Shown: piece after piece, positions 24,599 through 62,582 of the stretch | How the letters are laid out: the number at the start of each line of letters is the position of its first letter | Position numbering within the stretch: the stretch's first letter is position 1 | Assembly: GCA_030704615.1 (NCBI GenBank) | Contig: CM060734.1 | Coordinates: forward strand, 49,476,001 to 49,540,000 | Direction: 5' to 3' | DNA: 64,000 nucleotides | DNA from: Takakia lepidozioides | Lineage: Eukaryota; Plantae; Bryophyta | Position numbers and translations under genes: made by a program | Notes under the pieces: generated by a model | What the model saw: the letters and a program-made list of their open reading frames with translations, nothing else | The model's database searches: none | What the model was told of the DNA's origin: nothing

Positions 24599-26431
24599 TC
24601 AATGCAGCTGTGTTCTGTCACCTCTGTCTTCCATCATTTTTCTCACCTTTGATGCATCATTCCACCTGCCAGCAGCAGCATAGATCTTTGATAGCAGCAC
24701 ATAAGTTCCAGTATCCTGTGGATTCCACTTGAGAAGGTCTTTTGCCACACGTTCTGCTATCTCCACATTCCCATGAACTCTGCACGCACCAAGCAAGGTC
24801 CTCCACAGCACAGCACCTGGTCTGATTGGAATTTTCTTAATAAAGTTTTCTGCCTCATTCAATTGGCCAGCACGCCCAAGAAGATCCACCATGCAGCCAA
24901 AATGCTCCACCGTCGGAGTAAGGCTGTAATCCTGACTCATGGAATGAAAGTAGTGGCAGCCTTCATCAACCAGGCCAACGTGGCTACATGCTGAGAGAAG
25001 AGATATATAGGTAATACCGTCTGGCTTCAAGCCTTCCTGTTGCATTTGTTCAAACAGTCTAAAGGCTTCCCTACCCAGCCCGTGCTGAGCATATCCTGCA
25101 ATTATCACATTCCATGAGACCACATTTTGTTGAGCCATATTCTTGAACACTTGATGTGCAACATTCATATTCCCTCCTTTGGCATACATATCCACAAGGG
25201 CAGTCTCCAGAACAATATCTGCTGCAATTCCAGATTTGACGATCTCAGCATGGATCTCCTTGCCCTTTTCCTCAGCTGCCAGGCTTGCACACGCATTCAG
25301 AATGCAAGTGAATGTGACTTTGTTGGGCACCACCCCTTCCTGTATCATTTGCTCATAGGTCTCCAAAGCCTCCCTACCATACCCATGTTGAGCATATCCT
25401 GCTATCATTGCACTCCATGTGACCACATTTCGTTCAGCCATATTGGCAAAGACTTGGCGTGCATCCTCCATGCTTCTGCATTTGGCGTACATGTCGACAA
25501 GGGCAGTCTCGACAATGACATCTTCTACTCCAGTTTTCTCGATGTCAGAATGGACCCGTTTGCCCTTCTCCAGTGCTTCAAGGCAGGCACACTCATTGAG
25601 AACACAAATGAATGTGACCTTGTCGGGTGTCACCCCTTCCCATATCATTTGCTCATACATCTCAAAAGCCTCCCCACAGCCAAGTTGAGCATACGCTGTG
25701 ATCATCACATTCCATGAAACCACTGTTCGTTGAGCCATATTGTCAAACACTGTCCGTGCCTCCCTTATGCTGCCGCATTTGGCATACATGTCAGCAAGGG
25801 CAGTCTCCAGAACGATATCTGGCGCAATTTCAGCTTTAATGATGTCAGCATGAACGCCTTTGCCCTTTTCCAGAGCTCCAAGGCTGGCGCATGCCTTGAG
25901 AATGCAAATGAACGTGACGCAGTTGGGTTTCACCCCTTCTCGAATCATCTGCTGATAGATCTCGAAAGCCTCCTTGCTACACCCATGCTTTGCATATCCT
26001 GCCACCATGGTAGTCCAGGTATACACATCCCGTTCAGGCAGTTTGTCAAACAGTAAACGTGCATACGCCACACTACGGCACTTGGCATACATATTGACAA
26101 GAGTATTGAATAGAACAATGTTTGGCTTGAAACCACTTTGAACAATGTGGCCATGCACCTGTTTCCCCATTTCGAGGTCTTTTGTTCTGATGCACTCCCG
26201 CAATAAAGAGACATAAGTAATGCAGTCTGCTGAAATGCCTCGTTTGCTTAAAATGTGCAGCGCCTTCTTCTCATATTCTGCCTTAGGGAGTGTCCTCACC
26301 CCATCAGAAGAGTTCCTGTTGACTCCCTCTCTTGTTCGCTTTATAAGAGTGGTCATGGTTGAGGTGCCTGATGCAAAACATTGAGCCTGATTCAACACCT
26401 CCATCCTGTATGTCGCACATATCTTAGTCAA
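24599..26431 (-). CDS. PLS-class pentatricopeptide repeat protein with E domain (organellar RNA-editing factor type), intronless; start codon uncertain
   Basis: 610-aa ORF with P-L-S triplets (LVDMYAKC, NVVSWN), S2/E motifs HFGCMVDLLGRAG, WRTLLGACRVHG and YVLLSKIYAAAGRW. Confidence 0.9.
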   Translation of the reverse strand: MTKICATYRMEVLNQAQCFASGTSTMTTLIKRTREGVNRNSSDGVRTLPKAEYEKKALHILSKRGISADCITYVSLLRECIRTKDLEMGKQVHGHIVQSGFKPNIVLFNTLVNMYAKCRSVAYARLLFDKLPERDVYTWTTMVAGYAKHGCSKEAFEIYQQMIREGVKPNCVTFICILKACASLGALEKGKGVHADIIKAEIAPDIVLETALADMYAKCGSIREARTVFDNMAQRTVVSWNVMITAYAQLGCGEAFEMYEQMIWEGVTPDKVTFICVLNECACLEALEKGKRVHSDIEKTGVEDVIVETALVDMYAKCRSMEDARQVFANMAERNVVTWSAMIAGYAQHGYGREALETYEQMIQEGVVPNKVTFTCILNACASLAAEEKGKEIHAEIVKSGIAADIVLETALVDMYAKGGNMNVAHQVFKNMAQQNVVSWNVIIAGYAQHGLGREAFRLFEQMQQEGLKPDGITYISLLSACSHVGLVDEGCHYFHSMSQDYSLTPTVEHFGCMVDLLGRAGQLNEAENFIKKIPIRPGAVLWRTLLGACRVHGNVEIAERVAKDLLKWNPQDTGTYVLLSKIYAAAGRWNDASKVRKMMEDRGDRTQLH

Positions 26432-38695: not shown

Positions 38696-40585
38696 AGGTA
38701 CAGGGAACGACTGTGGGGAACAACACCTGCGAAGGGAACATGTTAGTTCACAGACGACGGTTAGTGAGGGAAACGGTTAGAACCGCGGATAGGAAGATAA
38801 AGGGAGAAACGGGGAAGAGAGGGAGATCATTCGGAGGAGGACTTCTTGGTGATAGAGGAGAGGGGATCGGGCAGAGATGAGGAACGGAAGTGAAGATGGA
38901 GAGATGATGAGTAGATGCTTGATATAGGCAAGGCTGTAATGATATTGTAGAGGAGATTAGAGACACAATGGCTTCGGCCTGATACCTGATAAATCATAAT
39001 CGGATACTTTTACGCTACAAACACACTGTGTAGAGAGATCTGAGTGAAGCTGTGGAATGAATGGATGAGTTGATGGAATCCAATAGATTGATAAAGCAAA
39101 CTGATACTTAATTATCAATGGTAAGATAGTTAACATGAATACCAAAAGGGAAACAAATAGGAAACACCCCCATGATACACTAGCTGTAGGTCATGACTGA
39201 TTGTTCTGCGCGGGCTGAGTACTTAGAGATTTCCAACTCTTCAATCTTGGAGTTTCCGCCTCGAATAGCGAAGGGATGGGTGAGTAAAAGCCGCGCGACA
39301 TTTGGCGACCATACTGGGGACCTGGGACATGAACAACCAGATGTGACAGGCATCTGGTGGGATCATGGTGGTTGGAGGATTAAAGAATTTGAAGTGAATC
39401 AAATTCCCTGTGGAACGAAGGAAGAAAGATTGTCCAAACAATTCTTTCAAAGGTTCTTGGAATTGCCAGACGGATGTAAAGAAAATATTCTTAAACGAGT
39501 GCATGATGCTGATCCAGAATGGGGTCTGGAGAAAGGAGTGATAAAGATTTATCAGGTAGCCTGTAGAGGAAGAGCACGTTGGTTACCAACATTGGTTTAT
39601 GTGATAGCATTGCTATCCATTAAACGAGTAGAGTTTGAAGGCTGGGAAGAAAGAAAGGTGAATGTTTATACTCATATGCATGAAGAGCTTGTACTGGTAA
39701 AGAATTGGATTCCAAAGGATATTTTGTGGATCAAACTCACACCAAGAACAGCTTTTCAGACTTGTTTGCCATATGGTTATATGGTAACGGAGACTTCAAG
39801 TATAGCCAAAGGTGCATTAAAGCTTGAAAGAAACCCAGGCATATACGAGAGATATTACAGAAGAGAGTTTTGGTTATTGCCACATTAAAAGAAATGAAAG
39901 ACATGGGACATGAGTGATGAAAGAGAAGCTAGACGACAGAGATATTCAGCAAAAAGAGAAAGCTATCTGAAAGCTAATTATCCATATCTTTGGGAGAGAG
40001 GAATAGACATAGGGGAATCATCTGGACCTCTCACACCATCAAGATCAAAGAGTGCATCACCTATACCGGAAGAACTAGAGTTGGATGCCACTCCTTCTGT
40101 TTCTTTGCAAGAAAGATTAAGGGAATTGGTACAGGAAGAAGATCAATCACGAGGTGAAAGATCTGAGGTACATCCTTGGATAAAAGACTTGACAGAAATC
40201 TTTGATAAGAGTTGGCATGGAACACCAAAAGCAGGAACTCAAGTTTCTGAAGCAGAAGATGAAGAAGGAGAAGAGGATGTGGCAGAGCCAACGGAGAGTT
40301 CAGACTCTCCAACACCATTACAGTTGAGTTACATGAGTGAAGAAGAAACCCAAGGGTAGAACTTGGAGGATGAAAACAGAGAGAAGAAATTAGAAGAGGA
40401 AGAATATGAAGAAGTAGACCCAACAGCTGAGGTTGAGACTACAACCAGGACATCCCAACCCGTTGGACCTGGATCAAGTGGAGCACTTGGATCACAGGCC
40501 AACGAAGGTGTCGGCTCAGGGGGATCAGGCGGGCTGCCTGGATCTGGCTCTGGGGGGACAGGGAGTGTGGGAAGTAGTGCAACTG
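38696..40585 (+). mobile_element. fragment of non-chromovirus gypsy family: partial 5' LTR (to 39300), PBS, 5' extra ORF, gag N-terminus
   Basis: Colinear with ~58585-60480. The LTR ends GACA at 39300 and is followed by TTTGGCGACCATACTGGGGA. Confidence 0.88.
39193..39888 (+). CDS. extra 5' ORF of the gypsy element, 231 aa, unknown function, starting within the LTR
   Basis: Intact ORF. The second copy (59090-59783) differs largely by synonymous changes. Confidence 0.7.
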   Translation: MTDCSARAEYLEISNSSILEFPPRIAKGWVSKSRATFGDHTGDLGHEQPDVTGIWWDHGGWRIKEFEVNQIPCGTKEERLSKQFFQRFLELPDGCKENILKRVHDADPEWGLEKGVIKIYQVACRGRARWLPTLVYVIALLSIKRVEFEGWEERKVNVYTHMHEELVLVKNWIPKDILWIKLTPRTAFQTCLPYGYMVTETSSIAKGALKLERNPGIYERYYRREFWLLPH

Positions 40586-40587
40586 TA

Positions 40588-40917
40588 TCATCCTTTATGT
40601 GTATTGTATTTATTTTCACTTGATATTTGTTATTTGATAAACTTGTAATTCAAAGATGGCTTTAGAAGTAAATATACATAAATATAAATGTATAGGCAAA
40701 TGTACACATAAATTATAATGGTACACATACCAGAGTAAATGAGGTAGACTGCGGGGGAGTACTGGTATTGTGGCTGGTATGAAGAAACTGATACCAGCCT
40801 GGTCTGGTATATGACCAACTATTCTCCGAAACAATACCAGACTGGTCTGGTATCTCATACCAGTGCATATACCAGTACTTTATACCAGTCCTTCACCTAT
40901 ATACCAGTCCAACACTG
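40588..40917. mobile_element. hAT MITE right end with ACCAG/CTGGT subterminal repeats
   Basis: Ends CCAACACTG at 40917 and carries many ATACCAG motifs. Confidence 0.6.
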
Positions 40918-40925
40918 GTAACAAC

Positions 40926-41765
40926 CAGTGTTGTGGGGGTTCTGCCTTTTTAAGAAACCCGCCGGGTGCGGGTTTTTTTTTGGAGCCAAGTCGGGGTCCA
41001 GATCCGGGTTTTTGAAATTTGGAAAATCCGGGTCCGGGTTCGGGTCCGGGTTTGTCAACACGAACTCGGGTTAGGGTCCGGGTAGTTGTTGGGAAATATT
41101 AGCGGGTTCACGAGTTCGGATCCGGGTCCTAATTTATTGATTAAATAAATTAGAAAAATAAGATTAATTAGGGATAAAATTATTTTTGGCTGGAAAAAAC
41201 TTTAAATCTTAATAATGAATTTTATTTTAAGAGACATTCCTTCAAAATATACCATGAATGTGAATATGTATACCACGAATAAGAATTAAAATAGAGGTTT
41301 GATGTGTGGGATCTGGCCTAATAGTAATATATGACGCCTCCTTTGGGAGGTGTAAATTATGGTCCCATAGGGCACAACTTTGTGACACCACTCTGTGGAT
41401 TGAACCCACAACTGCTTTTGAGGTAATATGTGGGCATTACCACATTAACGTTGTGGGGTTGGCTGCTGCGGCCTATTGCTGCTCATCCCCTCCACATATG
41501 ACAAAACCTACCAAATCTAAGGTGGACCCCGCATGCCCCATCTAAAATTAAGACCCGGACCCTGACCCGCTACATTGGCCCGCTGGTCGCGGGTTTAACG
41601 GGTTCTGGACCCAGCAGGCGGGTCCAGGTCCGGTTCCGGGTTCATTTCTAAAATGAGCCCGGGTTAGGGGCCGGGTTTTTTGTGATAGCACGGGTCCGGG
41701 TGCGGGTAACCCGGATCCTAACCCGCCGGGTACCGGCCTTCAAAACCCGGACCCGCACAACACTG
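40926..41765. mobile_element. non-autonomous hAT element (MITE), 840 bp
   Basis: TIR CAGTGTTGTG / CACAACACTG, perfect 8-bp TSD GTAACAAC (40918-40925 and 41766-41773), and CCGGGT subterminal repeats. Confidence 0.92.
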
Positions 41766-42099
41766 GTAACAACGTTCTCCTACGACCATGACTATGTCGG
41801 CGCCTCCAAATTAGCCCCTCCCCAAAACCAACTTAATAAAATGTGTTGTTGGGCATCTGGCCAGAACCATATTTGGAGCGAGCACTAGGGAATGACATTG
41901 TGCAACTAGATTTTCCCGCTCCGCGAAAAATACAAAGGAAAATTTCGGCAATATCTCTAATAGGAACATGTTGATGGTAGCTTGCTGAAATGAGCTGCCT
42001 AGATTATGATATAGCTTCACTAAAAAAGCCAGCTAGTACCGCCTTGCCTTCCATCTTCTTCTAAGGACCGTAAAGCACTACCAGAAATTTTCTAGTGTA

Positions 42100-42609
42100 T
42101 TTGGACGTCTGCTTATACAGGTGAAGATTTGAGGCAAGTCGTGATAGGGCGTTACGCTTTTTGTGAACATCCTGCGCCAGGCTATCCAGGGCATTACGCT
42201 TTCCGTGACCTCCCGCGCCAACCTGTCTAGGGCGTTACGCGTTCTGTGAACATCCTGCGACAGGATGGACCACTTGAATGATGACCCGTCAGCGAAGAAT
42301 GGTGACGTCAACTAAAAAAATTGTTGTCCGTGCTTTACGCTGGGTAAGTCGCTGGACCTCGAGCGGTAGTCCTCGTAGGTGCCCTCAAATCAGTGAATGC
42401 CCGAGGTCCAAGGACTTACCCTATACATAATGGGGGCAACTCTCTTGCCCAAACCTCTCCCAAGGACTTGAAAATTCAAAGCAAGTCCCACAGAGTAAAT
42501 CGCTGGTTGACCTAGTTACCCCTTTTATAGTTAGGTTGGGTATACTAGGTGGCATCCAACATGAAAGTTGTAAGGTGCCCGTCTGCCCTAAACATTGTTG
42601 GATGCTACA
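42100..42609 (-). repeat. probable LTR fragment of another retroelement inserted just before the protease
   Basis: Starts TGTAGCA on - exactly where pol homology to ~62247 begins. CTATAAAAGGG lies on -, and three GGGCRTTACGC tandem units lie at 42146-42260. Left boundary approximate. Confidence 0.45.
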
Positions 42610-45600
42610 AGGTATAATGTGAGGCCAGAAGGGCAAGAAACAGTCATGGATTTTGATGATTCTATGCCAGTTATCCAGTTGAGAATTGGAAGCACAGAGC
42701 TGGCATATGTACTGATAGTTGGAGGCTCTGGTGTGAATATCATGACAGACCAATTGAGACAGAAGCTAGGTCTAAACAACATGAAACCAGCCCCATTTAC
42801 AGTAACCATGGCAGACCAAAGGAGTGTACAGCCATTGGGATTGATCAGAGGAGTTAAAATCCAGATTCAAGAGATGATCTTTAAGATCACAGTAACTGTG
42901 TTGAAGATGAATGAAGTCCTGGAAGCTTATTCCTTATTGTTGGAAAGACCATGGCTGAAACAAGCCAAGGTGTCTCATGATTGGAATTCACAGTTACTGA
43001 CTGTGCAGGATGGGTTGAACAAGATACAAATCACCACTAAGAAATTTGAAAGACTATCTGCTACAAGAAGACCAAGAGGGGTCAGAGAGTATGATTGGAA
43101 AGAAGGACTGGATGAGGAACATGAAGCTACTTTGTTCGCTGCACACCCAGAGTGGGAACAGGTTGCAGAGATGCAATTAGAAGGCCTGAGTTGTTTAAAA
43201 AGTATCTACTGTGGTGCAGTGACAACAACCCCAATTGAGGAGGAAATAAATAGTTACCCACCACATTTTTACGAGGAAAGGGAAGGAGAGATTGATATCC
43301 TAGAGGAACCAGCCACTGTAAGTCTACAGGATGAAATAGTAACTGGTTGGACAATCACAGCTGATGAGCAAGTGAGGGAAGTGAATGTGGGAACTGAGAA
43401 GGAACCAAGGATGGTGAAGGTAGGGGCGGATCTAGAGCCAGAATTCTTTGAGGAAGCAAAGAGTCTGTTCATTAAATACAGAGATGTATTTGCTTGGAGC
43501 TATGAGGATCTGAAGGGGATACCACCTGAGATCTGTCAACATAAGATTGAACTGGAACCAGTATCAATACCAGTTAAACAGGCGAGATACAGGATGAATC
43601 CCAACTATGCAGAGAAGGTTGGAGAAGAGATCAAAAAGTTGGCTGAAGCTAAATTTATATACCCGATAGAGTACACAACTTGGTTGTCACCCATTGTGAT
43701 AGTTCCCAAGAAAAATGGCAAACTAAGAGTTTGTGTGAACTACAAGAAGCTGAATGCTTGTACGAGGAAGGATCATTTTCCTCTACCATTCACAGAAGCA
43801 GTATTGGACACTGTGGCAGGCCATGAGATGTATTCATTCATGGATGGCTTCAGTGGTTATAATCAAGTACAGGTGGCAGAGGAAGATCAAGGAAAAACAG
43901 CTTTCATCACGGACTGGGGTGCTTATGCATACAAAGTCATGCCTTTTGGACTTTGTAATGCACCAGCAACTTTCCAGAGAGTTATAAGTGAATCTTTTCA
44001 GGAGTACCTTGATGATTTCATGCAGGTGTTCTTGGATGATTTCAGTGTGTATAGCTCTAAGAGTGAGCACTTGCATAAATTGGAGTTGTGCTTGGCCAGA
44101 TGCAGGATGAGAGGTCTGGGCCTGAATCCAGAGAAATGTACTTTCTATGTGAACTCAGGGGTACTTTTGGGACACATAGTGTGTAAAAAGGGACTTCTAG
44201 TGGATCCCAGAAAGACGGAGGCCATTAAAGCCTCCCCACCTCCAGTAAATGCTAAGAGTCTAAGGAGATTCCTGGGACAAACCAGCTACTACAGAAGATT
44301 TGTCAGATGGTATGCACAGATGGCAACACCTTTGAGCAAACTTTTAAAAAAAGACGCAGTGTTTGCATGGACAGATGAATGTCAACAGGCTTTTGAGGAA
44401 CTGACATTGTCAATGACAACTACACCTGTATTGATTAATCCTCACTGGCAGGAAATGTTCCATGTTCACTGTGATGCTTCAGGAGAAGCATTGGGAGCGG
44501 TGCTAGCCCAAAATGTTACAGGAAGGATAGATTCACCTGTGTACTATGCTAGCCGATTAATGAACAATGCTGAAAGAAATTATAGCACAACAGAAAGAGA
44601 AGCATTGGCAATGATCTATGCAGTGAAGAAATTCAGGCATTACCTGTTGGATAAGAAGTTTATGTTCTATGTGGATCACCAAGCTTTGATATACTTGGTA
44701 AACAAACCTCTGATAAGCGGAAGAATAGCAAGATGGTTGATAATCTTACACGAATTTGAGTTTGAGGTTGTTTACAAGCCTGGGAGGCTGCATCTTGTGG
44801 CAGACCACTTGTCACGGTTATCAACAGGTGAATCAGCCACAGGAGTAGATGATCAATTACCAGATGCGAGCTTATTTGCCGTGGAGGTGCAGGGAAGTGC
44901 AGATGATTGGTTAGATTGGCAATGGCCAATCAGATACTATCTTACTCATGGTCAATGTCCACCAAGTTATGGGAAGGAGCAGAGAAAGAGAATTGCTATC
45001 AAGGCTTTACCTTACACTATGGTAGGAAGCAGAATGTATAAGCTAGGACCAGATGGAGTGCTGAAGCGATGCTTATACCACCATGAAGTTGATAAAGTTT
45101 TGGAAGAAGTTCATAAAGGAGTGGCAGGGGGCCATTTTGGAGAAGAGACTACCAGTAGGAAGATACTACTTGCCGGTTACTGGTGGCCTACCTTGTTCAA
45201 AGATGTGCACAAGTATTGTAAAACTTGTGATGAGTGTCAGAGGCTGGGACCATTGCAGAGGTCTGGGAAGATGGCTTTGCATCCTACAATGCCTACTGAA
45301 CCATTTCAGAAATGGGGATTAGACTTTGTTGGACCAATAAACCCACCAGCCAAGAATACACAGAACAAGTATATAATCACAGCTACTGATTATACTACGA
45401 AGTGGGTGGAAGCTAAAGCTTTGAGGGACAACACAGCTAAGTCCACAGCCAGGTTCATGTATGAGAACATACTTACACGGTTTGGCTGTCCCCTGGAATT
45501 TATCAGTGATCAGGGAAGTCACTTCATCAATGAGACCATAGAACTCTTGACTAAGGAGTTCATGATTGTGCATAGGAAAAGTACAACCTATTACCCACAA

Positions 45601-46160
45601 GGTAATGGACAGGCAGAGGCTACCAACAAAATACTATGTACCATCTTGGCTAAAATAGTCAATGCAAACAGAACAGACTGGGATACAAAGCTACTGACAG
45701 CTTTGTGGTCATACAGGACTTCATATAAAGTCACCACTAAGTATACACCATTCCAATTAGTTTATGATATGGAAGCTTTACTTCCAGTGGAGTTTTTATT
45801 ACCTACTATGAGAACTGAATGGGGAAGAAGAATGGAATTGGAAGATTCAATTAAGGTCAGGAAACATGAATTATACCATATGGAGGAAGTACGAGCTGAT
45901 GCAGCTGACAACATGACGAGAATACAGATGAAAAGGAAGGATCAGTTTGATGAAGGGAAGTTGAAGACTTTCAAAACAGGAGATTTGGTTTTGTGGTTAC
46001 AGAAGAAGGGAAAGATTAAGGCTTCTAAGCTTAAATCGCCATGGAAGGGACCTTATGTCATACAAAAGATGTATGATAACAACACGACCATGTTACAAAC
46101 CATTAACAAATAAATGCTGGGCAGGGTCAATGCCAACAAGTTGAAAGGATACAGTGGTAT
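42610..46160 (+). pseudogene. pol (protease, RT, RNase H, integrase), probably inactive
   Basis: 1172-aa ORF with FLDD, HCDAS, HHCC, KWGLD, SDQG and GPY. Protease DGGSG has become VGGSG and RT CVDY has become CVNY; premature TAA at 46111. Confidence 0.92.
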
Positions 46161-47102
46161 ACATGACAAGCCATTGAGGCACAATTTGCATATAGAACCA
46201 CAGGAGCAAATACAGGCTGTTCCAGTAACACCAATGGAGCATAGAATACTTGTCGTTAAACCGGTGAGGAGCGGAAAACACAGATGTTTAAATAGCTATC
46301 ACAGCCCAACACAGGGTCACACAGCCTATCACAGCCCAGCACAGTGTCACACAGTCGCGCACAGCCTAGCACAGGGCGGCACAGCCTGTCACAGCCTCAC
46401 ACAGCCAATCAGAATTACACAGTCCATAGGATTAGTGACAGGTGGACGAAAGAAAACATCAGGGAAATGGCCGGCGGAAGAAAGGGCGGAAGTCAGTTTA
46501 AAAGTGGACGCGTGGAAGTCAGGCCGTGACGCACAGCTGAGAAGGAGCTGCAAGAACAAGTGTCATAAAAAAAAAGGACAGGAGTGGCCGTCAAAGTACC
46601 TACCTACTACGTCAAAGAGGATGAATGGCGGGCCCATTAATGCATACGGAAAAAGGGTAACGGAACATACGGCGAGTACAGAAAAACGAATTTCTTGTCA
46701 CGTGTGTTATCCTAGTGGACAGGCCAGCGGGGAAAATCCACTAAAGAAAATTAATTCTAAAATCCAGTCACAGCGGTTACAGCCAATCATGAAGCAGGAG
46801 CAACTTCAAGAAAGTGAAATGGTTCTGAGTGCAAGAGTCGGTGTCGTTCCAGGTAACGGGCGTCTCGACGGGATAGTTTTGAAGCTATGAGGGAACTAGC
46901 AGATTATACGCTCGCGATACTACTCACGCAGTGGCGAGGAAACAGAACAACAGAGAGTAACTTTTCTCTTGTTCAATGCTTGCAAGCCCCGCAGGTTTAC
47001 AGGACACTACCCATAGCATTTTGTGGCAATCATACGTTTGTGCTTTGTGCTCTGCAGGCATTACTTCAGTTGTTACAGCCACAGCCTTACGGTTTCTCTA
47101 AA

Positions 47103-50100
47103 ATGAAGAGAGTAAGAGGTATGGAGGACATCAAGGTGAAAAGCACCACAATCCTGCAGAAACAGACGATTGCGACGCCATACGCGGTGAAGTTACTGAC
47201 GGAACTGCGATTACAAGGATTGCAAAACAAGGATTGGACATTGCACCATCGGAAGTACATGTTAGAATTCTTGCAGAACTTTGACCCAAAGACAGGAGCC
47301 ACAATGGTGAAGGGAGTTGAATTAGAACTTACTCCCTTATACCTACAGCAACTGTTTTCATTGCCAGCAGGTCAGGTTCAAGTGGACGAGCACAGGGCTA
47401 GATTGCAGATGAAAGATTTGTTTGAAGAAGGGAGTTTCTTTAAAACTCAAGGCTATGCTTGTACCAAAGCGGTGTACCCAGGGCTTAGGGAGGTGGGCCA
47501 GATATTGAACGTTCTGTTTGCCATGAAACAGAACCAGCAATATTTGAGCAGATCCTTCACAGAAGAAATACTCAAAGGCCTGAGAGGAGAAGAGGTAGCA
47601 TGGGAGAACATCATGTACAACGGACTGGTAGAGGAGATGAAAAGATTGCAGGGAACTGCCACTAAATCTCCTATCATAGTATCTGGGCCAGTCATTGCAC
47701 AAATCATCCTAGACTCATGCGTACTTGATGCGAGAGAAAGGAAGGAAATGGGAGTGTTTGAAATAACAACCACTACCATAGAAGAGCAAGGTTCTTCACA
47801 GGGTGAAGGGGGATTGGCAGAGCATCAACAGCCCAAAAGACAGAGGAAACGGATCACGTTGGAGCCGAACCATTGGCTACAAGGCAGCCGGAGGAAGAAG
47901 TTACTCAAGCTCTTGTGCAGGAGAGGGTACAGCAGCACAGAGATCAAGGGTTACAAACAGCACAACCTGTGGAGAGGGAACAGGAAGTCAATTCAGTATC
48001 ACAGCCATCACAGCCAGGTGAACGGCTTGCCAAAGAGTTACCACAAGTGGTCCATGCGGTTCCTCCACAAATAATAGATTTGGAAACAGAAGGGTTAGAT
48101 ATTCCAACTACAGAGCAAGTGGTGGCAGAGATTGAGAGAGGTGATCTTCTCTATGAAGACTCTAGTTTGCTCAGAGAGAGAGTGGAGCCAGAGGTCCAAA
48201 ATCTGTCCAGTGAACTTCCTGATGTGTAAGTAATACCCCCACCAGCGCCACAAGTTCCAGAAGAGGAACATCAGGACACAGCAGCATCTGGGAGAAATGA
48301 GGAAATTGAGAAGGAGGATCTGGTGGAGCAGTGGCCTGAGTGGTTTGTGAGGCATCATCCTATGGATGAGGGGGGTGAACAGCAGCATGTTAACCATGAT
48401 GGGCCTCAGCAGGCTATGTTGATGAACTCCATAAGCCGAACCCTCAATTTGTTGGGAACTTACATGAAGTCACATGTTCCAGTGACTCAGTTGGAAGTTC
48501 TGAAGGAGGAACTCAGAAGAGAGTTCGAAAATCGGTTGGCAACCGAGGGTGTTAACAAAGTTGAGATGGAAGTGCATCTGCAGTTGCAACAGGAGTTGAG
48601 GGAAACAAAGAATGCTCTGCAATTTGCTAAGCAGCAACTGATTGAGGGGGGTCTGGAGCAAGACCATCTGCAGGAGATACACAAGCAGCAATTATTCCAA
48701 TTGCAGAGCAAGCATGAGGATGAGATGCAAGGACTAAAGGAACAACAGGCAGAGTTGGGGGTAGTATATCAAAGGATGACAGTGCAATGTGCCACCCTCA
48801 CAAATGTTCTAGAGCAAGCCACAACAGAAGCCAACCAACAGAGGGAGCGATGTGTAAGGGCAGAAACGGAGGTAGTGGAGCAAGCCAAATTCATTGTGGA
48901 CCTCAAAGATACAATATGTCACAATGAGGGGAGATTCAGTAACCTGTAGAGCCACCTGCTGTGAAACTGGTTCTATTGGTGTTTCCACCATTGGCATCCC
49001 TTGCACTTCTTGCGAAGAAGACCCGAAAACTAGAGTTCTGGCCCTCAAATACGCCTCCATGAGATGTTCTTCAGGAATCATGAGCCTTTGGTCTATGTTT
49101 GAACTCAAGTCCTCCACTTGAGTCTGCAGTGTATCCACATCCTCTTGGAGCTCTCCTATTCTACTATAGACATTGTCTATAGTAGTGGTGGCAATATTCT
49201 GCAGCTAACCAGGAGAAGTACATTGTGGAGTTACAACAGACCCTTATGTCGAATAGGAATCAACTCTCTGTAGCTAACAAGGCAGCGAGGGAAGCCAATA
49301 ATCTGGCTGCAGCTTATGCCAATTTAGTTGAACCTCATGAGAAGCGCATGCAAGGATTGCAACATCAGTTAGATGCCTACAGACTCAAGGAGGAGCAGAG
49401 TCTCAGAGATGTTACACGGGACAGAGTGGATGACCAACTTTTAAAAGTATGGTTAGCACAAGGGCCAGTGGAAGGGAAAGCACCGAGAAAGCTCACCCAG
49501 GGGGAGATGAATGACCTGAGGCTGCAGTTGCACGGCCTGAGGTATGGGGAAATGCTGCTTTCAAACCACCCAAGACTCATGCTGCACGGGAATACAACCG
49601 AGCAATGATCATGCCCTTCAATGAAATTCCACATAGCTTGGATTTGGCTTGGAATCAATTTGGTCCTCCACAATCTTTTCCACACTACTACCAAATAATG
49701 CGCATTTGATTGCCAGTGGCCACTCGGACTAAGATTCTGGCAATGAATCAGCTCATTGAGGATCATCATTTTTCAAGGTACTGGTCTGAGGCAGGCACCA
49801 TGTTGAAGGAGTTAATAGCTTTCCAGGTTGTTCATGGGCACATTCACACCAAAACAAAGGAAGTAGCGAGTTTGGTCATGGGCTGTGGAATTTATTATAC
49901 TGCTTGTTTCATTGCACGTTACCACATTGAGCAGCAGAAGATGCAGTCCAGATTTCTGACTTATTCCACTACAGATCATTGGACCTTACCTGTGGTGCCG
50001 CATCATACGTATTTATATGATGTGAAAATCATGTTACAGAGGGATTCACAACTCCGTTCATGGTTCAACATGGCCTGGAACAACTTGAGCAACGAAATAC

Positions 50101-50618
50101 GGCATATTGACGACATTTTTAATAAGGAGCAGACAGCTTGGTAATACCTATACTGCTCCAAAGTTACTGGCACACCTCTCACCTACACTGAGAAGGAATT
50201 GTTGAAGTTCAATCAACTTGCTTTCAACAGGTTACACAACGTTGTGAAGCTTAAGGTTCCTGACATGGTGGGGCCACACTGTATGCCAATTTTCATTCCA
50301 GAGAAACCAAAAAAGGCAAGAAAACCAAAAAATTGCAGGACTGAAACAGATTTGGACACAACAGCTGAATCTTCAGAACAAACTCTTGACATATGGGAGG
50401 AATATGATCAAGCACTGCACGACAAGAAACGACGGGGATCTCCCACACCAGAGCCATTACAGCCGGTTCAGTCAAAGGGCAACAAATCAGGTACAAGTAC
50501 AGCTCAAGCATCTCCAGCAAGCAGTCATAGAACTCGGGCACGTACAGAGAGCCCTCCAAGGCACTCTCACAAACAGACAGGACCACGTTCACAAAGATTT
50601 ACTGATCCTAAGCAGTAA
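47103..50618 (+). pseudogene. long sense-strand extra ORF downstream of pol (plant-mobile-domain/Athila-ORF-like N-terminus plus coiled coil), disrupted
   Basis: W..H..YMLEFLQNF..MVKGVELELT..LQQLFSLP.G motif and an E/Q-rich coiled coil, broken by stops, frameshifts and an inversion. Confidence 0.65.
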
Positions 50619-50656
50619 ACCGTGAGGACACGGCTTTTTGAGAGGGGAAGGGGTAA

Positions 50657-51563
50657 TGTTAGGAGGCAGTCTGGGACTTAGGCATTTTTATGGGTTCTGT
50701 GGAGTCTGGGACTTAGACACTTCTATGGGTTCTGAGGGGTACCCTTAATTTTTTGAGATAGCCCGTCACAACCAGTCACAACCCGACACAGTCACAGCCC
50801 GTCACAGCCATACACAACCCGACACAGTCACAACCCATCACAGCCATACGTAGCCAGTCACAGCCCGACACAGCCCGAAACAGCCGTCACAGTCTGACAC
50901 AGCTGTCACAGTCGTAGGGAATGGTTATCATGACAGGGAATGACTGTGGGGAACAACATCTGCCGGGGAACATGTAATTCACGGAGGACGGTTAGTGAAG
51001 GAAAACGGTTAGAACAGGGGGGAAGGGATAAAGCGGGCAGCGGAGACGGGAGGAAAAACACTTTTGGGAGAACACTTTTGGGGGGATGGAGATCATTGCT
51101 GGGGGACTTTTGCCACGGAGATCACTCCTGGGGAAGGACTGAGATCGAAGGAAGGGAAGCTGGCGAGGAGGAAGGAGATACTATAGGACAGAGTTAGTAC
51201 GAGATGTAGGATTACTTAGAGGGATAGATTAGAGAAGTTAGGACACCAGCATGTATCCGATTATGATTAATCTGATTCTCATCCGATACAAACACCTTGT
51301 GTTGAGAGACTTGAGTGAAGCTGTGCATGAATGAAATCAGGGGGCCCAAAGAAGCAATCTGACGCTTAAAAAGATACCTGGTCATGATAAACAGGGAATA
51401 TAAACTGATAAGGAATATAATTGGAAACCCAACAATGATTCACTAGCTGCAGGTCATGACTGATTGTTTCACGCGGGCTGAATGCTTAGAGATATCCAAC
51501 TCTTCTATCTTGGAGTTTCCCCCTCGGATAGCGAAGGGATGGGTGAGTAAAAGCCGCGTGACA
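50657..51563 (+). repeat. 3' LTR (TG...CA), 907 bp, with ACAGCC microrepeats
   Basis: TGTTAG...GTGACA; homologous to 58356-59197 and 38696-39300. Confidence 0.9.
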
Positions 51564-52547
51564 GAAAGCCCTCGATTAGGAGGGGTGCAGCGGCTCGGTC
51601 TCATGATTTTTGGACCTGCGGTGTGGGAGATCTCGAATTTCAAGTACTTTGGGTCGCTGGAAATTCACGAAAAATAGCAAAGTGGGCTTTCATGGAGCAA
51701 GGATTAGCCCTTCATGTGGGAGATTTGGAATTTCAAGTACTTTGGTCGCGGGAAATTTGTGAAAAATAGCAAAGTGGATATATCAATATATGAAGCCTCG
51801 ACAGGGGAGATTGCAAAAATATCAAAGTGGGCTTTGTTGAAACAATGACGTGGAGATCTCCCAAATTACAAGGTCTCTGGATGCATAGGGGATTGCACTT
51901 GGACTTTAGATGATATTGGACACTGGAGGTCGCACTTGGGCCTCTACATGGAAGAAGCACTTGGATACATAGGAGATTGCACTTGGGGCTTAGATTTCAC
52001 ATAGGCCAATGGCGCAAGCTACCCTAGATCTCCCAAACAGGGTGGTGTTTGGATACATAGGGGATTTCACTTGGACACATGGGCCTCGACATAGGGGGCG
52101 CACTTGGATACGTAGGAGATTGCACTTGGACTTAGATGACACTTATGGCACTTGGGCCAACGGCACATGCTACCCTAGTCAATATATAAAGCGAGCCGGT
52201 TTGTTTGTTTTGTTTTGTTTTGTCTTGTCACGTTGAGATGTCCCAAACCGTGAGGCCCCAGCCCTAGTGCTTGGTACCACTGGAAAGCCCTCGATGAGGA
52301 GGGGTGCACCGGCTTGGTCTCATGATTTTTGGACCTGCGGTGTGGGAGATGTCGAATTTCAAGTACTTATGATCGCTGGAAATTCACGAAAATTAACAAA
52401 GTGGATTTTCCTGGGACAATGAATGGAGCCTCGACGAGAGATATATCAATGATGGTTGGATATATTACTACTCAATAAATTCATGGAAAAAAATAAATTG
52501 GGCTTGGAGATGGGAGACTTACTTAGATACATAGGATATTGCACTTG
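51564..52547 (+). repeat. non-autonomous interspersed repeat (possibly Helitron-like) with internal duplications
   Basis: GAAAGCCCTCGAT..GGACCTGCGGTGTGGGAGAT occurs at 51564 and ~52283; TTGCACTTGG units repeat. Confidence 0.5.
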
Positions 52548-58115: not shown

Positions 58116-58117
58116 GT

Positions 58118-58355: not shown

Positions 58356-61300
58356 TGTTAGAGGGCTGCTTGGGACTTAGACGCTTTTATGGGTTCTGTG
58401 GGGTACCCTTAATTTTTGCGCAGACTGAGACCAACAGGAGCCTTAGGTATGGCAGGAGCAGGCTTTAGGGGGGTTACACAGCCCGACACAGCTTCACACA
58501 GCCAATCACAGCCCGACACAGCTTTACACAGCCAGTCACAGCTTGACACAGCCTGTCACAGTACATGAGGAACAATTATCATTGATAGGGAACGATTGTG
58601 TGGGAACAACATCTGCAGAGGGAACGTGTTACTTCAGGGGTGACGGTTAGTTAGTTAGGTGGTTAGAACAGCTTGCGGGTAGATTAGGCGGAGCGGCAAT
58701 AGGAAGGGGATCACTTCTTGAGGAGGGTGACTTGTTCAGGGGAGACGTAACGGAGAGCGGAAACAGTGAAGAGGAGATGATGACTTGAATGAGGCTTAGT
58801 TCATGCAAGCTGTAAAATTATACAGTAGGGTAGAATAGAGACACCATGGCATAGGCATGATACATGATAAATCTTAATCCGATACTGAATCGATACAAAC
58901 ATACTCTGTAGAGAGACACGAAAGAAGCTGTGGAATGAATGCATGATTAATTGGAACTTAGTAGATACTGAAGCATCAGAGATACTGAAGCAATCTGATG
59001 CTTCAGTATACACGGTAAGGTAAATTGAAACATGAAGGCAGGAAGGAATACAAATAGGAAGCACAACCATGATTCACTAGCTGCAGGTCATGACTGATTG
59101 TTCTGAGCGGGCTGAGTGCTTAGAGATATCCAACTCTTCTATCTTGGAGTTTCCACCTCGGATAGCGAAGGGATGGGTGAGTAACAGCCGCTCGACATTT
59201 GGCGACCATACTGGGGAACTGGGTCATGAACAACCAGATGTGACAGGCATCTGGTGGGATCATGGCGGTTGGAGAATTAAAGAATTTGATGTGAATCAAA
59301 TTCCCTTTGGAACTGAGAAGGAAAGATTGTCCAAACAATTCTTTCAGAGGTTCTTGGAATTGCCAGACGGTTGTAAAGAAAACATTCTTAAGAGAGTACA
59401 TGATGCTGACCCCGAGTGGGGTCTGGAGAAAGGAGTGATAAAGATTTATCAGGTGGCCTGTAGAGGAAAAGCACATTGGTTACCAACACTGGTTTATGTG
59501 ATAGCATTGCTATCCATTAAGCGAGTAGAGTTTGAAGGCTGGGAGGAAAGAAAGGTGAATGTTTATACTCATATGCATGAAGAGCTTGTACTGGTAAAGA
59601 ATTGGATTCCAAAGGATATTTTGTGGATCAAACTCACACCAAGAACAGCTTTTCAGACTTGTTTGCCATAAAGTTATATGGTAACGGAGACTTCTAGTAT
59701 AGCCAAGGTGCATTGAAGCTTGAAAGAAACCCAGGCATATACGAGAGATACTACAGAAGAGAGTTTTGGTTATTGCCACATTAAAGAAATGAAAGACATG
59801 GGACATGAGTGATGAAAGAGAAGCTAGACTCCAGAGATATTCAGCAAAAAGAGAAAGTTATCTGAAAGCTAATTATCCATATCTTTGGGAGAGAGGAATA
59901 GACATAGGGGAATCATCTGGACCTCTCACACCATTAAGATCAGAGAGTACATCACCCATACCAGAAGAACTAGAGTTGGATGCCACTCCTTCTTTTTCTT
60001 TGCACGAAAGATTAAGGGAATTGGTACAGAAAGAAGATCAACCACGAGGTGAAAGATCTGAGGTACATCCCTGGATAAAAGATTTGACAGAAATCTTTGA
60101 TAAGAGTTGGCATGGAACACCAAAAGCAGGAACTCTAGTTTCTGAAACGGAAGACGAAGAAGGAGGAGAGGATGTGGCAGAGCCAACGGAGAGTTCAGAC
60201 TCTCCAACACCATTGCAATTGAGTTACATGAGTGAAGAAGAAGAAACCCAAGGGCAAAACTTGGAAGATGAAAACAGAGAGAAGAAATTGGAAGAGGAAG
60301 AGTATGAAGAAGTAGACCCAACAGCTGAGGTTGAGACTACAACCAGAACATCCCAACCCGTTGGACCTGGATCAAGTGGAGCACTTGGATCACAGGCCAA
60401 TGAAGTGTCGGCTTAGGGGGATCAGGCAGGCAGCCTGGATTTGGCTCTGGGGGGACAGGGAGTGTGGGAAGTAGTGCAACTGGAGCTGGGAATACTGTGA
60501 ATATAGTGGGGCTAGTAGCAGGGAGTGCTCAGGGGCCAGCACTTGGTGGAAGTTCCACCACAACTATAACAGGTCCTCAAGGACCAGCACCTGTCAGTGG
60601 GCAGGGGGTAGGGCCACAGATGGCGTTACAGCCAACACGGGCAAAACCACATTTTCCAATATATTCAGGAAAAGGGGATCCTGATGTACACATTAGCCAA
60701 TTTGAGCACATGTGTATTGTGAACAATGAGAATGGCGATGATGCCAAGATGAGATTGTTTCCTTGTTCACTTATCAAGAAAGCAAGTGAATGGTATGCAA
60801 GATTCCCTGATAATCATTTCCTAGCCTGGAATGGCTTGAATACAACATTCCGAAATAGGTTCAGGACAAGTAAAACTGAGGATGAAGTGTATGGAAGTTT
60901 ACAACAGTTAAAGCAAAAGAAGCATGAAACTATTGAGGAGTATATGGAAAAGATGGAATTGATGATGAAAAAGCTGGCTGTTGTACCAGCACCAGGTTTA
61001 CAGAAGACTTAGTTTGTGAGTGGACTAAGACCAGAGTTGCAAAAGAAAGTGGATATGTTACCCCATAATACAGTGGAGGAGGCATTTGAAACAGCGAACA
61101 GAATTGAGCAATTGGGAATGCTCAGGAGAGAGAAAAGGGATGATGAGGACTCTGAGGATGAGTCAGATGAGGAAGAAGAGCAAGAGCTTAAGAAGAAGAG
61201 TAAGAGGAAGGAAAAGTTGAAGAGGGATAACTATGAGAAAAGATTAGAAGAAATCTTGAAGAAGTATGCCATAGAGGCTGCAACACATTGGAGGAAGGGC

Positions 61301-62582
61301 GTTTGGTGTGCAAAATGCCAGAATGAAGGCCATACCACCATTGAATGCCACATGAAGGAGAAACATTGTACTATCTATAAAATGGATAACCATTCTACTG
61401 AGAATTGTTACTACAACAGAAGGACAGCAGCTAGAGAACCTAGGCAAGTAAGGGTGCATCAAGTGCAGCCCTAGCCAAGAAGAAACAGTGATCAGGACCA
61501 CTATGGTAGGCCTGGTGGTTATAACAATGGCATGAAAGGGAGAGGTAATCCAAGAGGGAATTACCAAGGAAATTCCAGAGGCAATTATCAGGGTAATCCA
61601 AGGGGGAATTACCAGCCAGGGAATCAGGATTACAGAAACAATCCCAGAACAGACCAAGGGCGAGGACCTAATGGGGAAGAACTGTGTTACTATTGTAATC
61701 AGGCAGGACATCGCAAGGCAGCCTATTCATTCTGGATTAGACACCAGAATGAGATGAGAGCTCCTGTGAATGAGGGCCCAGTGGTGGCAGCTCACATGGT
61801 TAGGCCATGTGTTGTACCAGAAGTAAGTACAATGATAGTAACAAGAAGCAAAGCCAAACTAATACCTCCAGTAGTTGAGGAAGATGATGATAATGAAGGT
61901 GGCAGTGATATGCCTAGAGATGATGAGGCTTGGAGAGATGAGAAGGAACTGCACAAGGAAGTGGCAGATACCATAAGGGAAATGCAGAAGAGTACTGATA
62001 TTCCTGTGGCAGATTCCTCTGATTCTGATGGAGAAGAAGAAGTGAGTGAGGATGAAAGGAAGAAAGAAGTTGCAGACATGCAAAGTAATGAAGGGACTTT
62101 GGCTGAAGTAATATGCCAGACCAAAGCAGAGATTACCATTGGATAGCTATTGGCTGTCGCACCTTATTGTAGACACATGCTGTATCAAGCAATCAATCGA
62201 ATTGCCCAGGAGACAGGAAATACAGACCTGAACAGCAAGGTGACCAGTTATAATGTGAAGCCGGAAGGGCGAGAAACAGTCATGGACTTTGATGATTCTA
62301 TGCAAGTAATCCAATTGAGAATTGGATGCACAGAACCAACTGATGTACTGATAGATGGGAGGTTCTGGCGTGAATATCATGACAGACCAATTAAGGCAAA
62401 AGCTTGGTCTAAGTAACATGAAACCAGCCCCATTTACGGTAACAATGGCAAATCAAAGAAGTGTACAGCCATTGGGATTGATAAGAGGAGTTAAGATACA
62501 GATTCAAAAGATGATCTTTATGATCACAGTAACTGTGTTGAAAATGGATGAAGTCATGGAAGCTTACTCCTTATTGCTGGGT
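58356..62582 (+). mobile_element. non-chromovirus gypsy 5' part: LTR 58356-59197, PBS, 5' extra ORF, gag with three zinc-knuckle-like motifs, protease; 3' truncated
   Basis: TGTTAG...CGACA, PBS TGGCGACCATACTGGGGA, gag PHFPIYSGKGDPDVHISQF, CAKCQNEGHTTIEC, CYYCNQAGH, (GN.RGNYQ)n, protease DGGSG. Several stops. Confidence 0.92.
59200..59217 (+). promoter_or_regulatory. primer-binding site, probably tRNA-Arg type; identical copy at 39303-39320
   Basis: TGGCGACCATACTGGGGA lies 2 nt after the LTR CA and resembles Ogre/Tat Arg PBSs. Confidence 0.7.

What the first reader, a model, noticed from the sequence alone, without database searches (positions are those of the whole stretch)
39193..39888. Conserved ORF that starts inside the LTR and reads through the PBS, upstream of gag
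Seen: all three LTR copies have the same ATG about 108 nt before the LTR end (39193, 51456, 59090). In 5' LTRs the frame crosses the terminal CA and the PBS for 231 codons and stops 21 nt before gag. Differences between copies are mostly synonymous, both internally (GGT/GGC, AAA CGA GTG/AAG AGA GTA, GAT CCA GAA/GAC CCC GAG) and within the LTR (ATT/ATA, TCA/TCT, CCG/CCA/CCC, CGA/CGG). Known: Ogre elements have a 5' extra ORF, but to my knowledge not one initiating in U5. Inference: a selected accessory protein of unknown fold whose translation must be coordinated with gag and with tRNA priming.
Basis: partly seen in the sequence, partly recalled or inferred. Interest (0 to 1): 0.8.

Follow-up and report, generated by a model that had tools for sequence, protein, structure and literature searches.

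The report
Selected extra gene starting in LTR
A plant Ty3/gypsy jumping gene carries a real, evolutionarily protected 231-codon extra gene in front of gag; its only start codon lies inside the long terminal repeat, so it is read across the tRNA primer site, and neither its fold nor its job is known.

Summary
All three LTR copies carry the same ATG 108 nt before the LTR end (39193, 51456, 59090). In element 1 the frame runs 231 codons across the terminal CA and the primer-binding site and stops 21 nt before the gag ATG. Element 2's copy is broken.

The two copies differ mostly at third codon positions (27 of 38). dN/dS is 0.12 in this frame and 1.0-2.6 in four of the other five, which all contain stops. 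That matches the element's own protease (0.14). The C-terminal 148 codons are tightly constrained (0.06) and the N-terminal 83 less so (0.24, p=0.006). The 36 LTR-encoded codons alone are only suggestive (p about 0.06-0.09).

No homologue, Pfam family or confident fold was found, and a relative with 49% pol identity lacks the ORF.

It is an orphan 5' extra ORF, a known kind in plant gypsy elements. Its LTR-embedded start resembles yeast Ty1 GAG. The transcription start is unmapped, so initiation in R/U5 is likely but unproven. Sixteen ATGs lie between its start and gag's, so gag needs reinitiation, splicing or shunting.

This scan already reported the same ORF elsewhere in this genome (s1-488515, s1-474381).

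The parts
38702..39300 (+). Element 1 5' LTR, truncated at its 5' side, ending in ...ACA
   Evidence: Collinear with the element 2 LTR from 58587 onward. The LTR end is defined by where the three copies stop aligning.
39153..39161 (+). TATA-like motif (CAAATA; TATAAT at 51415 in the 3' LTR), 32-40 nt upstream of the ORF1 ATG
   Evidence: Read from sequence. Its function was not tested. If it is used, the transcription start would fall within about 10 nt of the ATG.
39172..39183 (+). Three-codon in-frame mini-uORF (ATG ATW CAC TAG), conserved in all three LTRs
39193..39888 (+). ORF1: 231 codons plus TAA; an orphan pre-gag accessory gene
   Evidence: dN/dS is 0.12 with 27 of 38 differences at codon position 3. 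It is the only open frame of the six.
39193..39300 (+). LTR-encoded codons 1-36 of ORF1
   Evidence: Comparison of the three LTRs gives 14 substitutions, 8 at position 3 and 7 synonymous (permutation p=0.076). Codons 11-31 change only synonymously. The pairwise ratio is 0.28.
39280..39285 (+). GTGAGT splice-donor-like hexamer inside the LTR-encoded part, identical in all three LTRs
   Evidence: sequences. Whether it is used as a donor was not tested.
39303..39320 (+). Primer-binding site (TGGCGAC...CTGGGGA), 2 nt after the LTR and inside ORF1 codons 37-43
   Evidence: A PBS of the same type sits at L001:1569-1587, right after that element's LTR. The tRNA-Arg assignment is from memory only.
39442..39885 (+). 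Strongly constrained C-terminal 148 codons of ORF1
   Evidence: dN/dS is 0.06, with 16 synonymous against 4 non-synonymous changes (p=3e-8).
39889..39909 (+). 21-nt spacer between the ORF1 stop and the gag ATG, holding a second in-frame stop (TGA)
   Evidence: There are no substitutions between the copies; element 2 has one 1-nt deletion just upstream, at the ORF1 stop.
39910..40359 (+). N-terminal, acidic part of gag in element 1; the capsid and zinc-knuckle parts are missing downstream
   Evidence: dN/dS is 0.28.
42595..46113 (+). Element 1 pol (PR-RT-RNaseH-IN), Ty3/gypsy domain order
   Evidence: Pfam RVT_1, RT_RNaseH, Integrase_H2C2 and rve.
50657..51563 (+). 3' LTR (TGT...ACA), preceded by a polypurine tract at 50640-50653. 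It holds the third copy of the ATG at 51456.
58356..59197 (+). Element 2 5' LTR
59090..59783 (+). Element 2 copy of ORF1, broken by a premature stop at codon 194 and a 1-nt deletion near codon 206
59805..62146 (+). Element 2 gag in pieces: N-terminal part, Retrotrans_gag capsid domain at 60464-61012, then zinc knuckles
   Evidence: PF03732 E=9e-12.

Best explanation
ORF1 (39193-39888) is a genuine protein-coding accessory gene of a non-chromoviral Ty3/gypsy retrotransposon family of a land plant. It is an orphan 5' extra ORF, sited between the primer-binding site and gag.

Shown here: the active lineage of the element has kept the ORF under purifying selection as strong as that on its protease. 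The selection is tightest on the C-terminal 148 residues and weaker on the N-terminal 83.

Inferred: translation starts at the conserved AUG that lies in the LTR, 108 nt before its end, in R or U5. This is the only in-frame AUG before codon 162. On that reading the last 36 codons' worth of the LTR, the terminal CA and the PBS each serve both as cis-acting replication signals and as coding sequence, as in yeast Ty1 GAG.

Inferred: gag sits 21 nt after the ORF1 stop, behind 16 further AUGs, so it cannot be reached by simple scanning. Rough odds for the route are coupled termination-reinitiation about 35%, a spliced or internally initiated mRNA lacking ORF1 about 35%, and shunt or IRES about 20%.

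What the protein does is not shown. It is 27 kDa, Trp-rich and mildly basic. My best guess is a trans-acting factor that deals with the host, for example by countering silencing or degradation (about 40%). An RNA/RNP cofactor for the element's own genomic RNA comes next (about 30%).
For: Coding and selection: between the two copies there are 25 synonymous and 13 non-synonymous differences. dS is 0.195, dN is 0.024 and the ratio is 0.12. Of 38 differences, 27 fall at codon position 3. The other five frames have 5-17 stops, with ratios of 1.0-2.6 in four of them. The antisense frame that shares the wobble position gives 0.24. The protease benchmark from the same two copies gives 0.14.

N-terminal part: the first 83 codons give 0.24, with p=0.006 for synonymous excess. 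The PBS-leader codons 37-83 alone give p=0.02-0.03. dS is uniform (0.18-0.21) along the ORF.

Start codon: there is no in-frame ATG between 39193 and 39676. The ATG, the open frame and the mini-uORF are conserved in all three LTRs, and sequence conservation rises sharply about 45 nt before the ATG.

Separate from gag: TAA and TGA are shared by copies that have dS of 0.2.

Lineage-restricted: relative L001 (49% pol identity) has LTR, PBS, then gag with only 68 nt between the LTR end and the gag ATG, so no room for an ORF1. tblastn found no ORF1 in L001-L005.

Other loci: earlier scan notes report the same 696-nt ORF at two other loci of this genome.

Precedents: Ty1 GAG contains the PBS (PMC5454406, PMC4974528). 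Heterogeneous 5' extra ORFs occur in plant gypsy elements (PMC6317226, PMC3485330).
Against: Only two copies plus one extra LTR end were available. The LTR-encoded 36 codons alone do not reach significance (p=0.06-0.09), and their first 10 and last 5 codons take non-synonymous changes.

The transcription start is unknown. A TATA-like motif 32-40 nt upstream of the ATG would place it very near, or conceivably past, the ATG.

Neither copy sits in an intact element. Element 1 lacks the gag capsid and nucleocapsid parts and appears chimeric: its two LTRs are only 75-91% identical, and dS in pol is 0.47 against 0.195 in ORF1. Element 2's ORF1 is broken.

There is no homologue, domain or confident fold, so the functional guess rests only on composition and short motifs.
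Confidence: 0.65

Rival explanations
1. The ORF is a real gene, but the LTR ATG is not its start. Transcription would begin at or after the ATG. The protein would then start at a near-cognate codon downstream of the LTR (for example the in-frame CTG or GTG at codons 44 and 51), or on a differently spliced leader.
For: The LTR part alone is not significant. A TATA-like motif lies only 32-40 nt upstream of the ATG. The earlier follow-up s1-488515 found selection only for the last 148 residues. Non-synonymous changes cluster in codons 5-10 and 32-35.
Against: The ATG and the open frame are conserved in three diverged LTRs. Codons 11-31 change only synonymously. Codons 37-83 also show third-position bias, and no in-frame ATG exists before codon 162. 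dS is the same in the LTR part as in the rest of the ORF.
Confidence: 0.2
2. ORF1 is simply the N-terminal domain of gag. On this view the master copy has one long ORF1-gag reading frame, and the stops seen here are decay.
For: In element 1, ORF1 and gag are in the same frame and only 21 nt apart.
Against: Two in-frame stops (TAA and TGA) lie in the spacer, and both are shared by copies that diverged under selection (dS 0.2). The same 696-nt ORF length is noted at other loci. The relative L001 starts gag with a similar acidic N-terminus directly after the PBS.
Confidence: 0.05
3. There is no protein. The frame is open by chance, and the conservation reflects RNA-level constraints of the leader such as U5-PBS interactions, dimerisation or packaging.
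For: The region includes U5, the PBS and the leader, where cis-acting RNA signals are expected. No homologue or fold was found.
Against: RNA constraint does not produce three-base periodicity. Here 27 of 38 differences are at position 3, the ratio is 0.12, and the other sense frames give 1.3-1.7. No ORF of 231 codons or more appeared in 200 shuffles.
Confidence: 0.03
4. ORF1 is a recently captured fragment of a host gene that the element carries passively, so the selection signal is inherited from the host gene.
For: Extra ORFs of plant LTR elements are thought to have been acquired from many sources (PMC6317226).
Against: There was no hit in 1.84 billion representative proteins apart from two spurious repeat proteins, and none in the word search. 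The differences counted here arose between element copies, not between host orthologues, so the selection acted within the element lineage.
Confidence: 0.05

Closest known systems
Sense-strand 5' extra ORFs (eORF-5'F) of plant non-chromoviral Ty3/gypsy elements: Ogre ORF1, and ORF0 of Retrosat2/RIRE3/RIRE8
   Same: It is a separate sense-strand ORF between the 5' LTR and gag. It has no recognisable domain, is restricted to a narrow lineage and is under purifying selection. Such ORFs fall into hundreds of mutually unrelated groups (PMC6317226). For Retrosat2 ORF0, Ka was below Ks and no function could be assigned (PMC3485330).
   Different: There is no sequence similarity to any of them: no PF10536 or PF04195, and no hit at all. 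It is shorter, at 231 codons against the 250-codon threshold of that survey. The element shows no aRH domain, so it is not a demonstrable Tat/Ogre/Retand member. The start codon lies inside the LTR and the ORF contains the PBS, which I did not find described for those ORFs.
Yeast Ty1/Ty2 GAG, a Ty1/copia-type element
   Same: The first ORF of the genomic RNA starts inside the 5' LTR and reads through the PBS. The Ty1 5' UTR is 53 nt and its PBS lies at RNA nt 95-104, within GAG (PMC5454406, PMC4974528). The same nucleotides therefore both code and act in priming and packaging.
   Different: In Ty1 the LTR-initiated ORF is gag itself. Here it is an extra protein that lacks a capsid or zinc-knuckle domain, and gag follows as a separate ORF. 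The superfamily (Ty3/gypsy) and the primer tRNA type also differ.
Polycistronic pregenomic RNA of plant pararetroviruses (Caulimoviridae): shunting and reinitiation
   Same: A reverse-transcribing element related to Ty3/gypsy must translate a downstream capsid gene behind an upstream ORF and many AUGs. This is my knowledge of the family, not tested here.
   Different: No transactivator homologue, shunt hairpin or other diagnostic feature was tested or found here. The resemblance is only in the problem to be solved.

Membership tests
Ty3/gypsy LTR retrotransposon (Metaviridae) | pol domain order PR-RT-RNaseH-IN | tested here: met
   RVT_1, RT_RNaseH(_2), Integrase_H2C2 and rve occur in that order in 42595-46113.
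Ty3/gypsy LTR retrotransposon (Metaviridae) | [quoted passage not shown] | tested here: met
   TGT...ACA termini. TGG lies 2 nt after the LTR end. A GA-rich tract at 50640-50653 precedes the 3' LTR. The target-site duplication could not be checked, because the element 1 5' LTR is truncated and element 2 runs out.
Ty3/gypsy LTR retrotransposon (Metaviridae) | gag with a capsid domain and CCHC knuckles | tested here: met
   Element 2 has PF03732 at E=9e-12, and CX2CX4HX4C motifs are readable in 61016-62146. Element 1 lacks this part.
5' extra ORF (eORF-5'F) of plant gypsy elements | A separate sense ORF upstream of the polyprotein, not fused to it | tested here: met
   TAA plus TGA lie between ORF1 and the gag ATG in both copies.
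5' extra ORF (eORF-5'F) of plant gypsy elements | Operational length of at least 250 codons (PMC6317226) | tested here: not met
   The ORF is 231 codons. This is a survey threshold, not a biological criterion.
Ogre / Retand (Tat clade) elements | An aRH (archaeal-type RNase H, PF13456) domain in pol, with extra-ORF domains such as PF10536 or PF04195 | tested here: not met
   Neither pol, the post-pol ORFs nor ORF1 hits these families.
Ty1-like LTR-initiated first ORF | The initiation codon is inside the 5' LTR, downstream of the transcription start, and the ORF contains the PBS | tested here: inconclusive
   The position of the ATG and the PBS inside the ORF are shown. The transcription start is not testable with these tools.
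Ty1-like LTR-initiated first ORF | The product is Gag | tested here: not met
   ORF1 has no capsid or zinc-knuckle match. gag is the next ORF.
F-box proteins (suggested by earlier first readers) | A match to an F-box profile | tested here: not met
   Pfam gave no hit even at E<=10, for the whole protein or for the C-terminal 148 residues. Only a loose LPxx-x12-P / ...CRxxxxW resemblance can be seen by eye.

The most novel reading that the evidence does not exclude
ORF1p could be a new kind of retrotransposon-encoded regulator that every genomic RNA makes first, because its start codon is built into the LTR. One possibility is an antagonist of the plant's silencing or degradation machinery, acting as a minimal adaptor with GW/WG and LPxx..P-type motifs. 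The other is a translational transactivator that lets ribosomes reinitiate at gag 21 nt after its stop. Either way, the balance between translation and tRNA-primed reverse transcription would be set on the PBS it reads through.
Probability: 0.12. Interest if true: 0.8.

Novelty: new variant of a known kind. Interest (0 to 1): 0.48.

Why it matters
Extra ORFs of plant LTR retrotransposons are common, but it is disputed whether they function at all (PMC6317226). This one is as constrained as the element's protease, which makes it a clean candidate for a functional accessory gene.

Its layout poses two testable problems. First, how is gag translated behind a 231-codon ORF and 16 AUGs? Second, how do ribosomes and the primer tRNA share the same stretch of RNA? 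In Ty1 the same overlap involves gag itself; here it involves a second protein.

The protein has no relatives in 1.84 billion representative sequences. Its fold and activity, if solved, would therefore be new information about how retroelements deal with plant hosts.

Tried and rejected
**Homology**
- Pfam gave nothing at default thresholds or at E<=10.
- The word-indexed protein search gave nothing.
- phmmer against 1.84 billion representatives gave two hits. Both are internally repetitive proteins whose scores add up many weak repeats, so I rejected them as spurious.
- The PDB sequence search at E<=10 gave nothing.
- ESM Atlas feature searches, whole protein and C-terminal part, scored 0.79-0.83. 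The hits were to hAT/DUF659/ZBED1-like clusters, below the level that shuffled proteins reach a third of the time, so they are not evidence.

**Fold**
- AlphaFold2 without an alignment gave mean pLDDT 33 for the whole protein and 40 for the C-terminal 148 residues.
- I ran no fold search, because matches to such models are meaningless.

**More copies**
- The exact-protein look-up found nothing.
- The metagenome scan by peptide patterns found nothing.
- The metagenome scan with a 28-nt exact pattern found nothing.
- The scan's own index, searched by sequence, was blank.

**Relatives**
- Five contigs carrying pol proteins 49-52% identical (L001-L005) show gag homology but no ORF1.

**Ideas rejected**
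- Leaky scanning to gag: ATGs are not depleted, with 16 observed against 15.9 expected.
- A readthrough fusion with gag: there are two in-frame stops.
- An F-box protein: no profile match.
- An antisense gene: all minus frames have stops.

**Not run**
- I did not use complex prediction, because I make no binding claim.

**Method note**
- In one search, a per-column majority base over the 108-nt LTR stretch was used inside the script, only to polarise substitutions. It was neither printed nor saved.
The consensus lines printed by the alignment tool were not used.
Full report
**What is there.** Earlier notes of this scan call the source a land-plant genome. The window holds two copies of one non-chromoviral Ty3/gypsy family.

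- Element 1 has a 5'-truncated 5' LTR (38702-39300), then ORF1 (39193-39888), then the N-terminal acidic part of gag (39910-40359).
- After that comes about 2 kb (40585-42607) unrelated to the other copy, in the place where the gag capsid and zinc knuckles should be.
- Next is an intact 1172-codon pol with the PR-RT-RNaseH-IN order (42595-46113), followed by several unannotated post-pol ORFs.
- The element ends with a polypurine tract and a 3' LTR (50657-51563).
- Element 2 has a full 5' LTR (58356-59197), a broken ORF1, and gag in pieces with a Retrotrans_gag domain (PF03732, E=9e-12). It ends within the protease at 62589.

**The observation.** The three LTR ends can be laid side by side without gaps over their last 108 nt. 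Each begins with ATG (39193, 51456, 59090) and ends in ...ACA.

- In element 1 the frame runs 231 codons.
- It crosses the LTR end at 39300 and, after two bases, a TGG-initiated primer-binding site at 39303-39320.
- It ends in TAA at 39886-39888, 21 nt before the gag ATG at 39910.
- The spacer holds a second in-frame stop (TGA). ORF1 and gag are in the same frame but cannot be joined by a single readthrough.
- Element 2's copy has a premature stop at codon 194 and a 1-nt deletion near codon 206. "231 codons in 5' LTRs" is therefore true of one copy only.
- In 200 shuffles of the 14-kb region, the longest ATG-ORF never reached 231 codons (maximum 219).

**Is it coding?** The two copies differ at 38 aligned positions within ORF1, and 27 of them are third codon positions (p=2e-6).

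| Region (Nei-Gojobori counts) | Syn / non-syn | dN/dS | p (synonymous excess) |
|---|---|---|---|
| ORF1, whole | 25 / 13 | 0.12 (dS 0.195, dN 0.024) | 4e-9 |
| C-terminal 148 codons | 16 / 4 | 0.06 | 3e-8 |
| N-terminal 83 codons | 9 / 9 | 0.24 | 0.006 |
| PBS-leader codons 37-83 | 5 / 5 | 0.22 | 0.03 |
| LTR codons 1-36 | 4 / 4 | 0.28 | 0.09 |
| gag N-terminal part | 10 / 11 | 0.28 | 0.007 |
| Protease (benchmark) | 26.5 / 16.5 | 0.14 | not computed |

- The two other sense frames give ratios of 1.3-1.7 and contain 15-17 stops. All three antisense frames contain 5-11 stops.
- The protease benchmark comes from the same two copies. ORF1 is therefore as constrained as an essential retroelement enzyme.
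- Such a ratio between two dispersed copies means that most of their divergence arose while their ancestors were still being selected for transposition.

**The LTR part and the start codon.** The constraint is uneven along the ORF, as the table shows. In the N-terminal 83 codons, 12 of 18 differences are at position 3.

- Adding the third LTR gives 14 substitutions in the 108 nt: 8 at position 3 and 7 synonymous, against 4.1 expected (permutation p=0.076).
- Codons 11-31 take five changes, all synonymous. The non-synonymous changes sit in codons 5-10 and 32-35.
- The LTR part alone is therefore suggestive, not proven.
- dS is uniform along the ORF (0.18-0.21). The codons just after the LTR are themselves periodic. 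There is no in-frame ATG between 39193 and 39676, which is codon 162.
- If codons 37-161 are translated, the only AUG that can serve is the one in the LTR, unless a near-cognate codon is used.
- Conservation among the LTRs rises sharply about 45 nt before the ATG. The U3-like part is about 75% identical, the 43 nt before the ATG differ at 16%, and the last 108 nt at 7-9%. This is what an R-U5 region would look like.
- A TATA-like motif lies 32-40 nt before the ATG (39153-39161; TATAAT at 51415). A conserved three-codon in-frame mini-uORF lies at 39172-39183.
- If that motif is the promoter, ORF1's AUG would be the first AUG, behind a very short leader. The transcription start might even lie beyond it.

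**What the protein is.** Nothing recognisable was found.

- Pfam gave no hit even at E<=10, and the PDB sequence search gave none.
- The word search found no candidate.
- A full phmmer pass over 1.84 billion representatives found only two repeat proteins, which match through summed weak repeats.
- Atlas feature scores were below the noise level.
- Single-sequence AlphaFold2 gave pLDDT 33 and 40, so I attempted no fold comparison.
- The protein is 27 kDa with pI 8.2. The C-terminal domain has pI 9.1 and the N-terminal 83 residues pI 5.5.
- It contains 10 tryptophans, all conserved between the copies, and four GW/WG dipeptides.
- Earlier first readers called it F-box-like. I see only a loose LPxx...P / CR....W resemblance and no profile match, so I do not file it there.

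**Distribution.**

- The best pol relatives in the protein collection are only 47-53% identical. The named ones at that level are from the liverworts Marchantia and Riccia; the rest are unnamed assembly contigs.
- In the closest, L001, the LTR ends at 1566. A PBS of the same type (TGGCGAC...CTGGGGA) follows, and gag starts at 1634 with a similar acidic N-terminus. This leaves no room for an ORF1.
- tblastn found gag but no ORF1 in L001-L005. ORF1 is therefore a lineage-restricted insertion between the PBS and gag.
- Within this genome the scan has met the same 696-nt ORF before, at two other loci. An earlier follow-up reached the same main verdict: a real, selected orphan gene with the last 148 residues preserved (s1-488515, s1-474381).
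- My data agree with that verdict. They add weaker but significant constraint on the N-terminal 83 codons, the argument for the LTR start, and the AUG count below.

**How gag can be made.** Sixteen ATGs lie between ORF1's ATG and gag's. That is exactly what composition predicts (15.9 in shuffles), so the region is not designed for leaky scanning. Three routes remain.

- Reinitiation coupled to ORF1 termination. The 21-nt spacer has no substitutions between the copies.
- An mRNA that lacks ORF1. A perfect GTGAGT donor-like hexamer is identical in all three LTRs at 39280-39285, but it also encodes Val-Ser, and I could not test any acceptor.
- A shunt or internal ribosome entry.

I rate these routes at roughly 35%, 35% and 20%. 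None is shown.

**Comparison with what is known.**

- Sense-strand extra ORFs upstream of gag are a recognised feature of plant non-chromoviral gypsy elements: Ogre ORF1, and ORF0 of Retrosat2/RIRE3/RIRE8.
- In the survey they fall into 314 mutually unrelated groups, and most lack known domains (PMC6317226, PMC3485330).
- An ORF that starts in the LTR and contains the PBS is established for yeast Ty1, where it is GAG. The Ty1 5' UTR is 53 nt and the PBS lies at nt 95-104 (PMC5454406, PMC4974528).
- The present case joins the two: an accessory protein, not gag, whose start is built into the LTR.
- I therefore call it a new variant of a known kind. It is a solid example of a functional extra ORF, but not a new class.

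**Caveats.**

- Only two copies and one extra LTR end were available, and neither element is intact.
- Element 1 looks chimeric. Its two LTRs are no closer to each other than to element 2's LTR. Its pol part is more than twice as diverged from element 2 (dS 0.47) as its 5' part (dS 0.195).
- The tRNA-Arg assignment of the PBS rests on my memory of plant tRNA-Arg 3' ends and was not tested.

Noticed in passing
window 40585-42607: In element 1 the gag capsid and zinc-knuckle region is replaced by about 2 kb with no similarity to element 2 and no long ORF. This stretch contains short internal repeats: 41029-41083 matches 41619-41676, and 42145-42181 matches 42228-42264.
   Followed up: partly
window 38702-51563: Element 1 appears chimeric. 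Its 5' and 3' LTRs are only about 75% identical in the U3-like part and 91% over the last 108 nt. Its protease region is far more diverged from element 2 (dS 0.47) than its ORF1/gag-N part (dS 0.11-0.20).
   Followed up: partly
window 58117-58364 (minus strand): An inverted fragment of the gag N-terminal region (78-93% identical to 40156-40392) abuts the start of the element 2 5' LTR.
   Followed up: no
window 46114-50618: There are several post-pol ORFs (258, 395, 208, 127, 144 and 139 codons) with no Pfam family. The 395-codon one has weak homologues (24-26% identity) at the same position in the relatives L001 and L002, so it may be a conserved 3' extra ORF of this clade.
   Followed up: partly
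window 50657-50755: The 3' LTR starts with a tandem duplication of about 50 nt that is present once in the element 2 LTR.
   Followed up: no
window 39280-39285, 51543-51548, 59177-59182: A GTGAGT splice-donor-like hexamer lies 15-20 nt before the LTR end and is identical in all three LTRs. If used, it would remove the PBS and ORF1 from a subgenomic mRNA.
   Followed up: no
window 12343-13392 and 25062-26126: Two tandem arrays: a 375-nt period (3 copies, 93% identical) and a roughly 300-nt period (4 copies, 62-77% identical). Neither is related to the finding.
   Followed up: no
window 51564-51703 and 52283-52422: A 140-nt direct repeat (89% identical) lies in the DNA just downstream of the element 1 3' LTR.
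   Followed up: no
L001:13199-15986: The 3' flank of the related element in contig L001 carries a long array of repeats with a period of about 109 nt.
   Followed up: no
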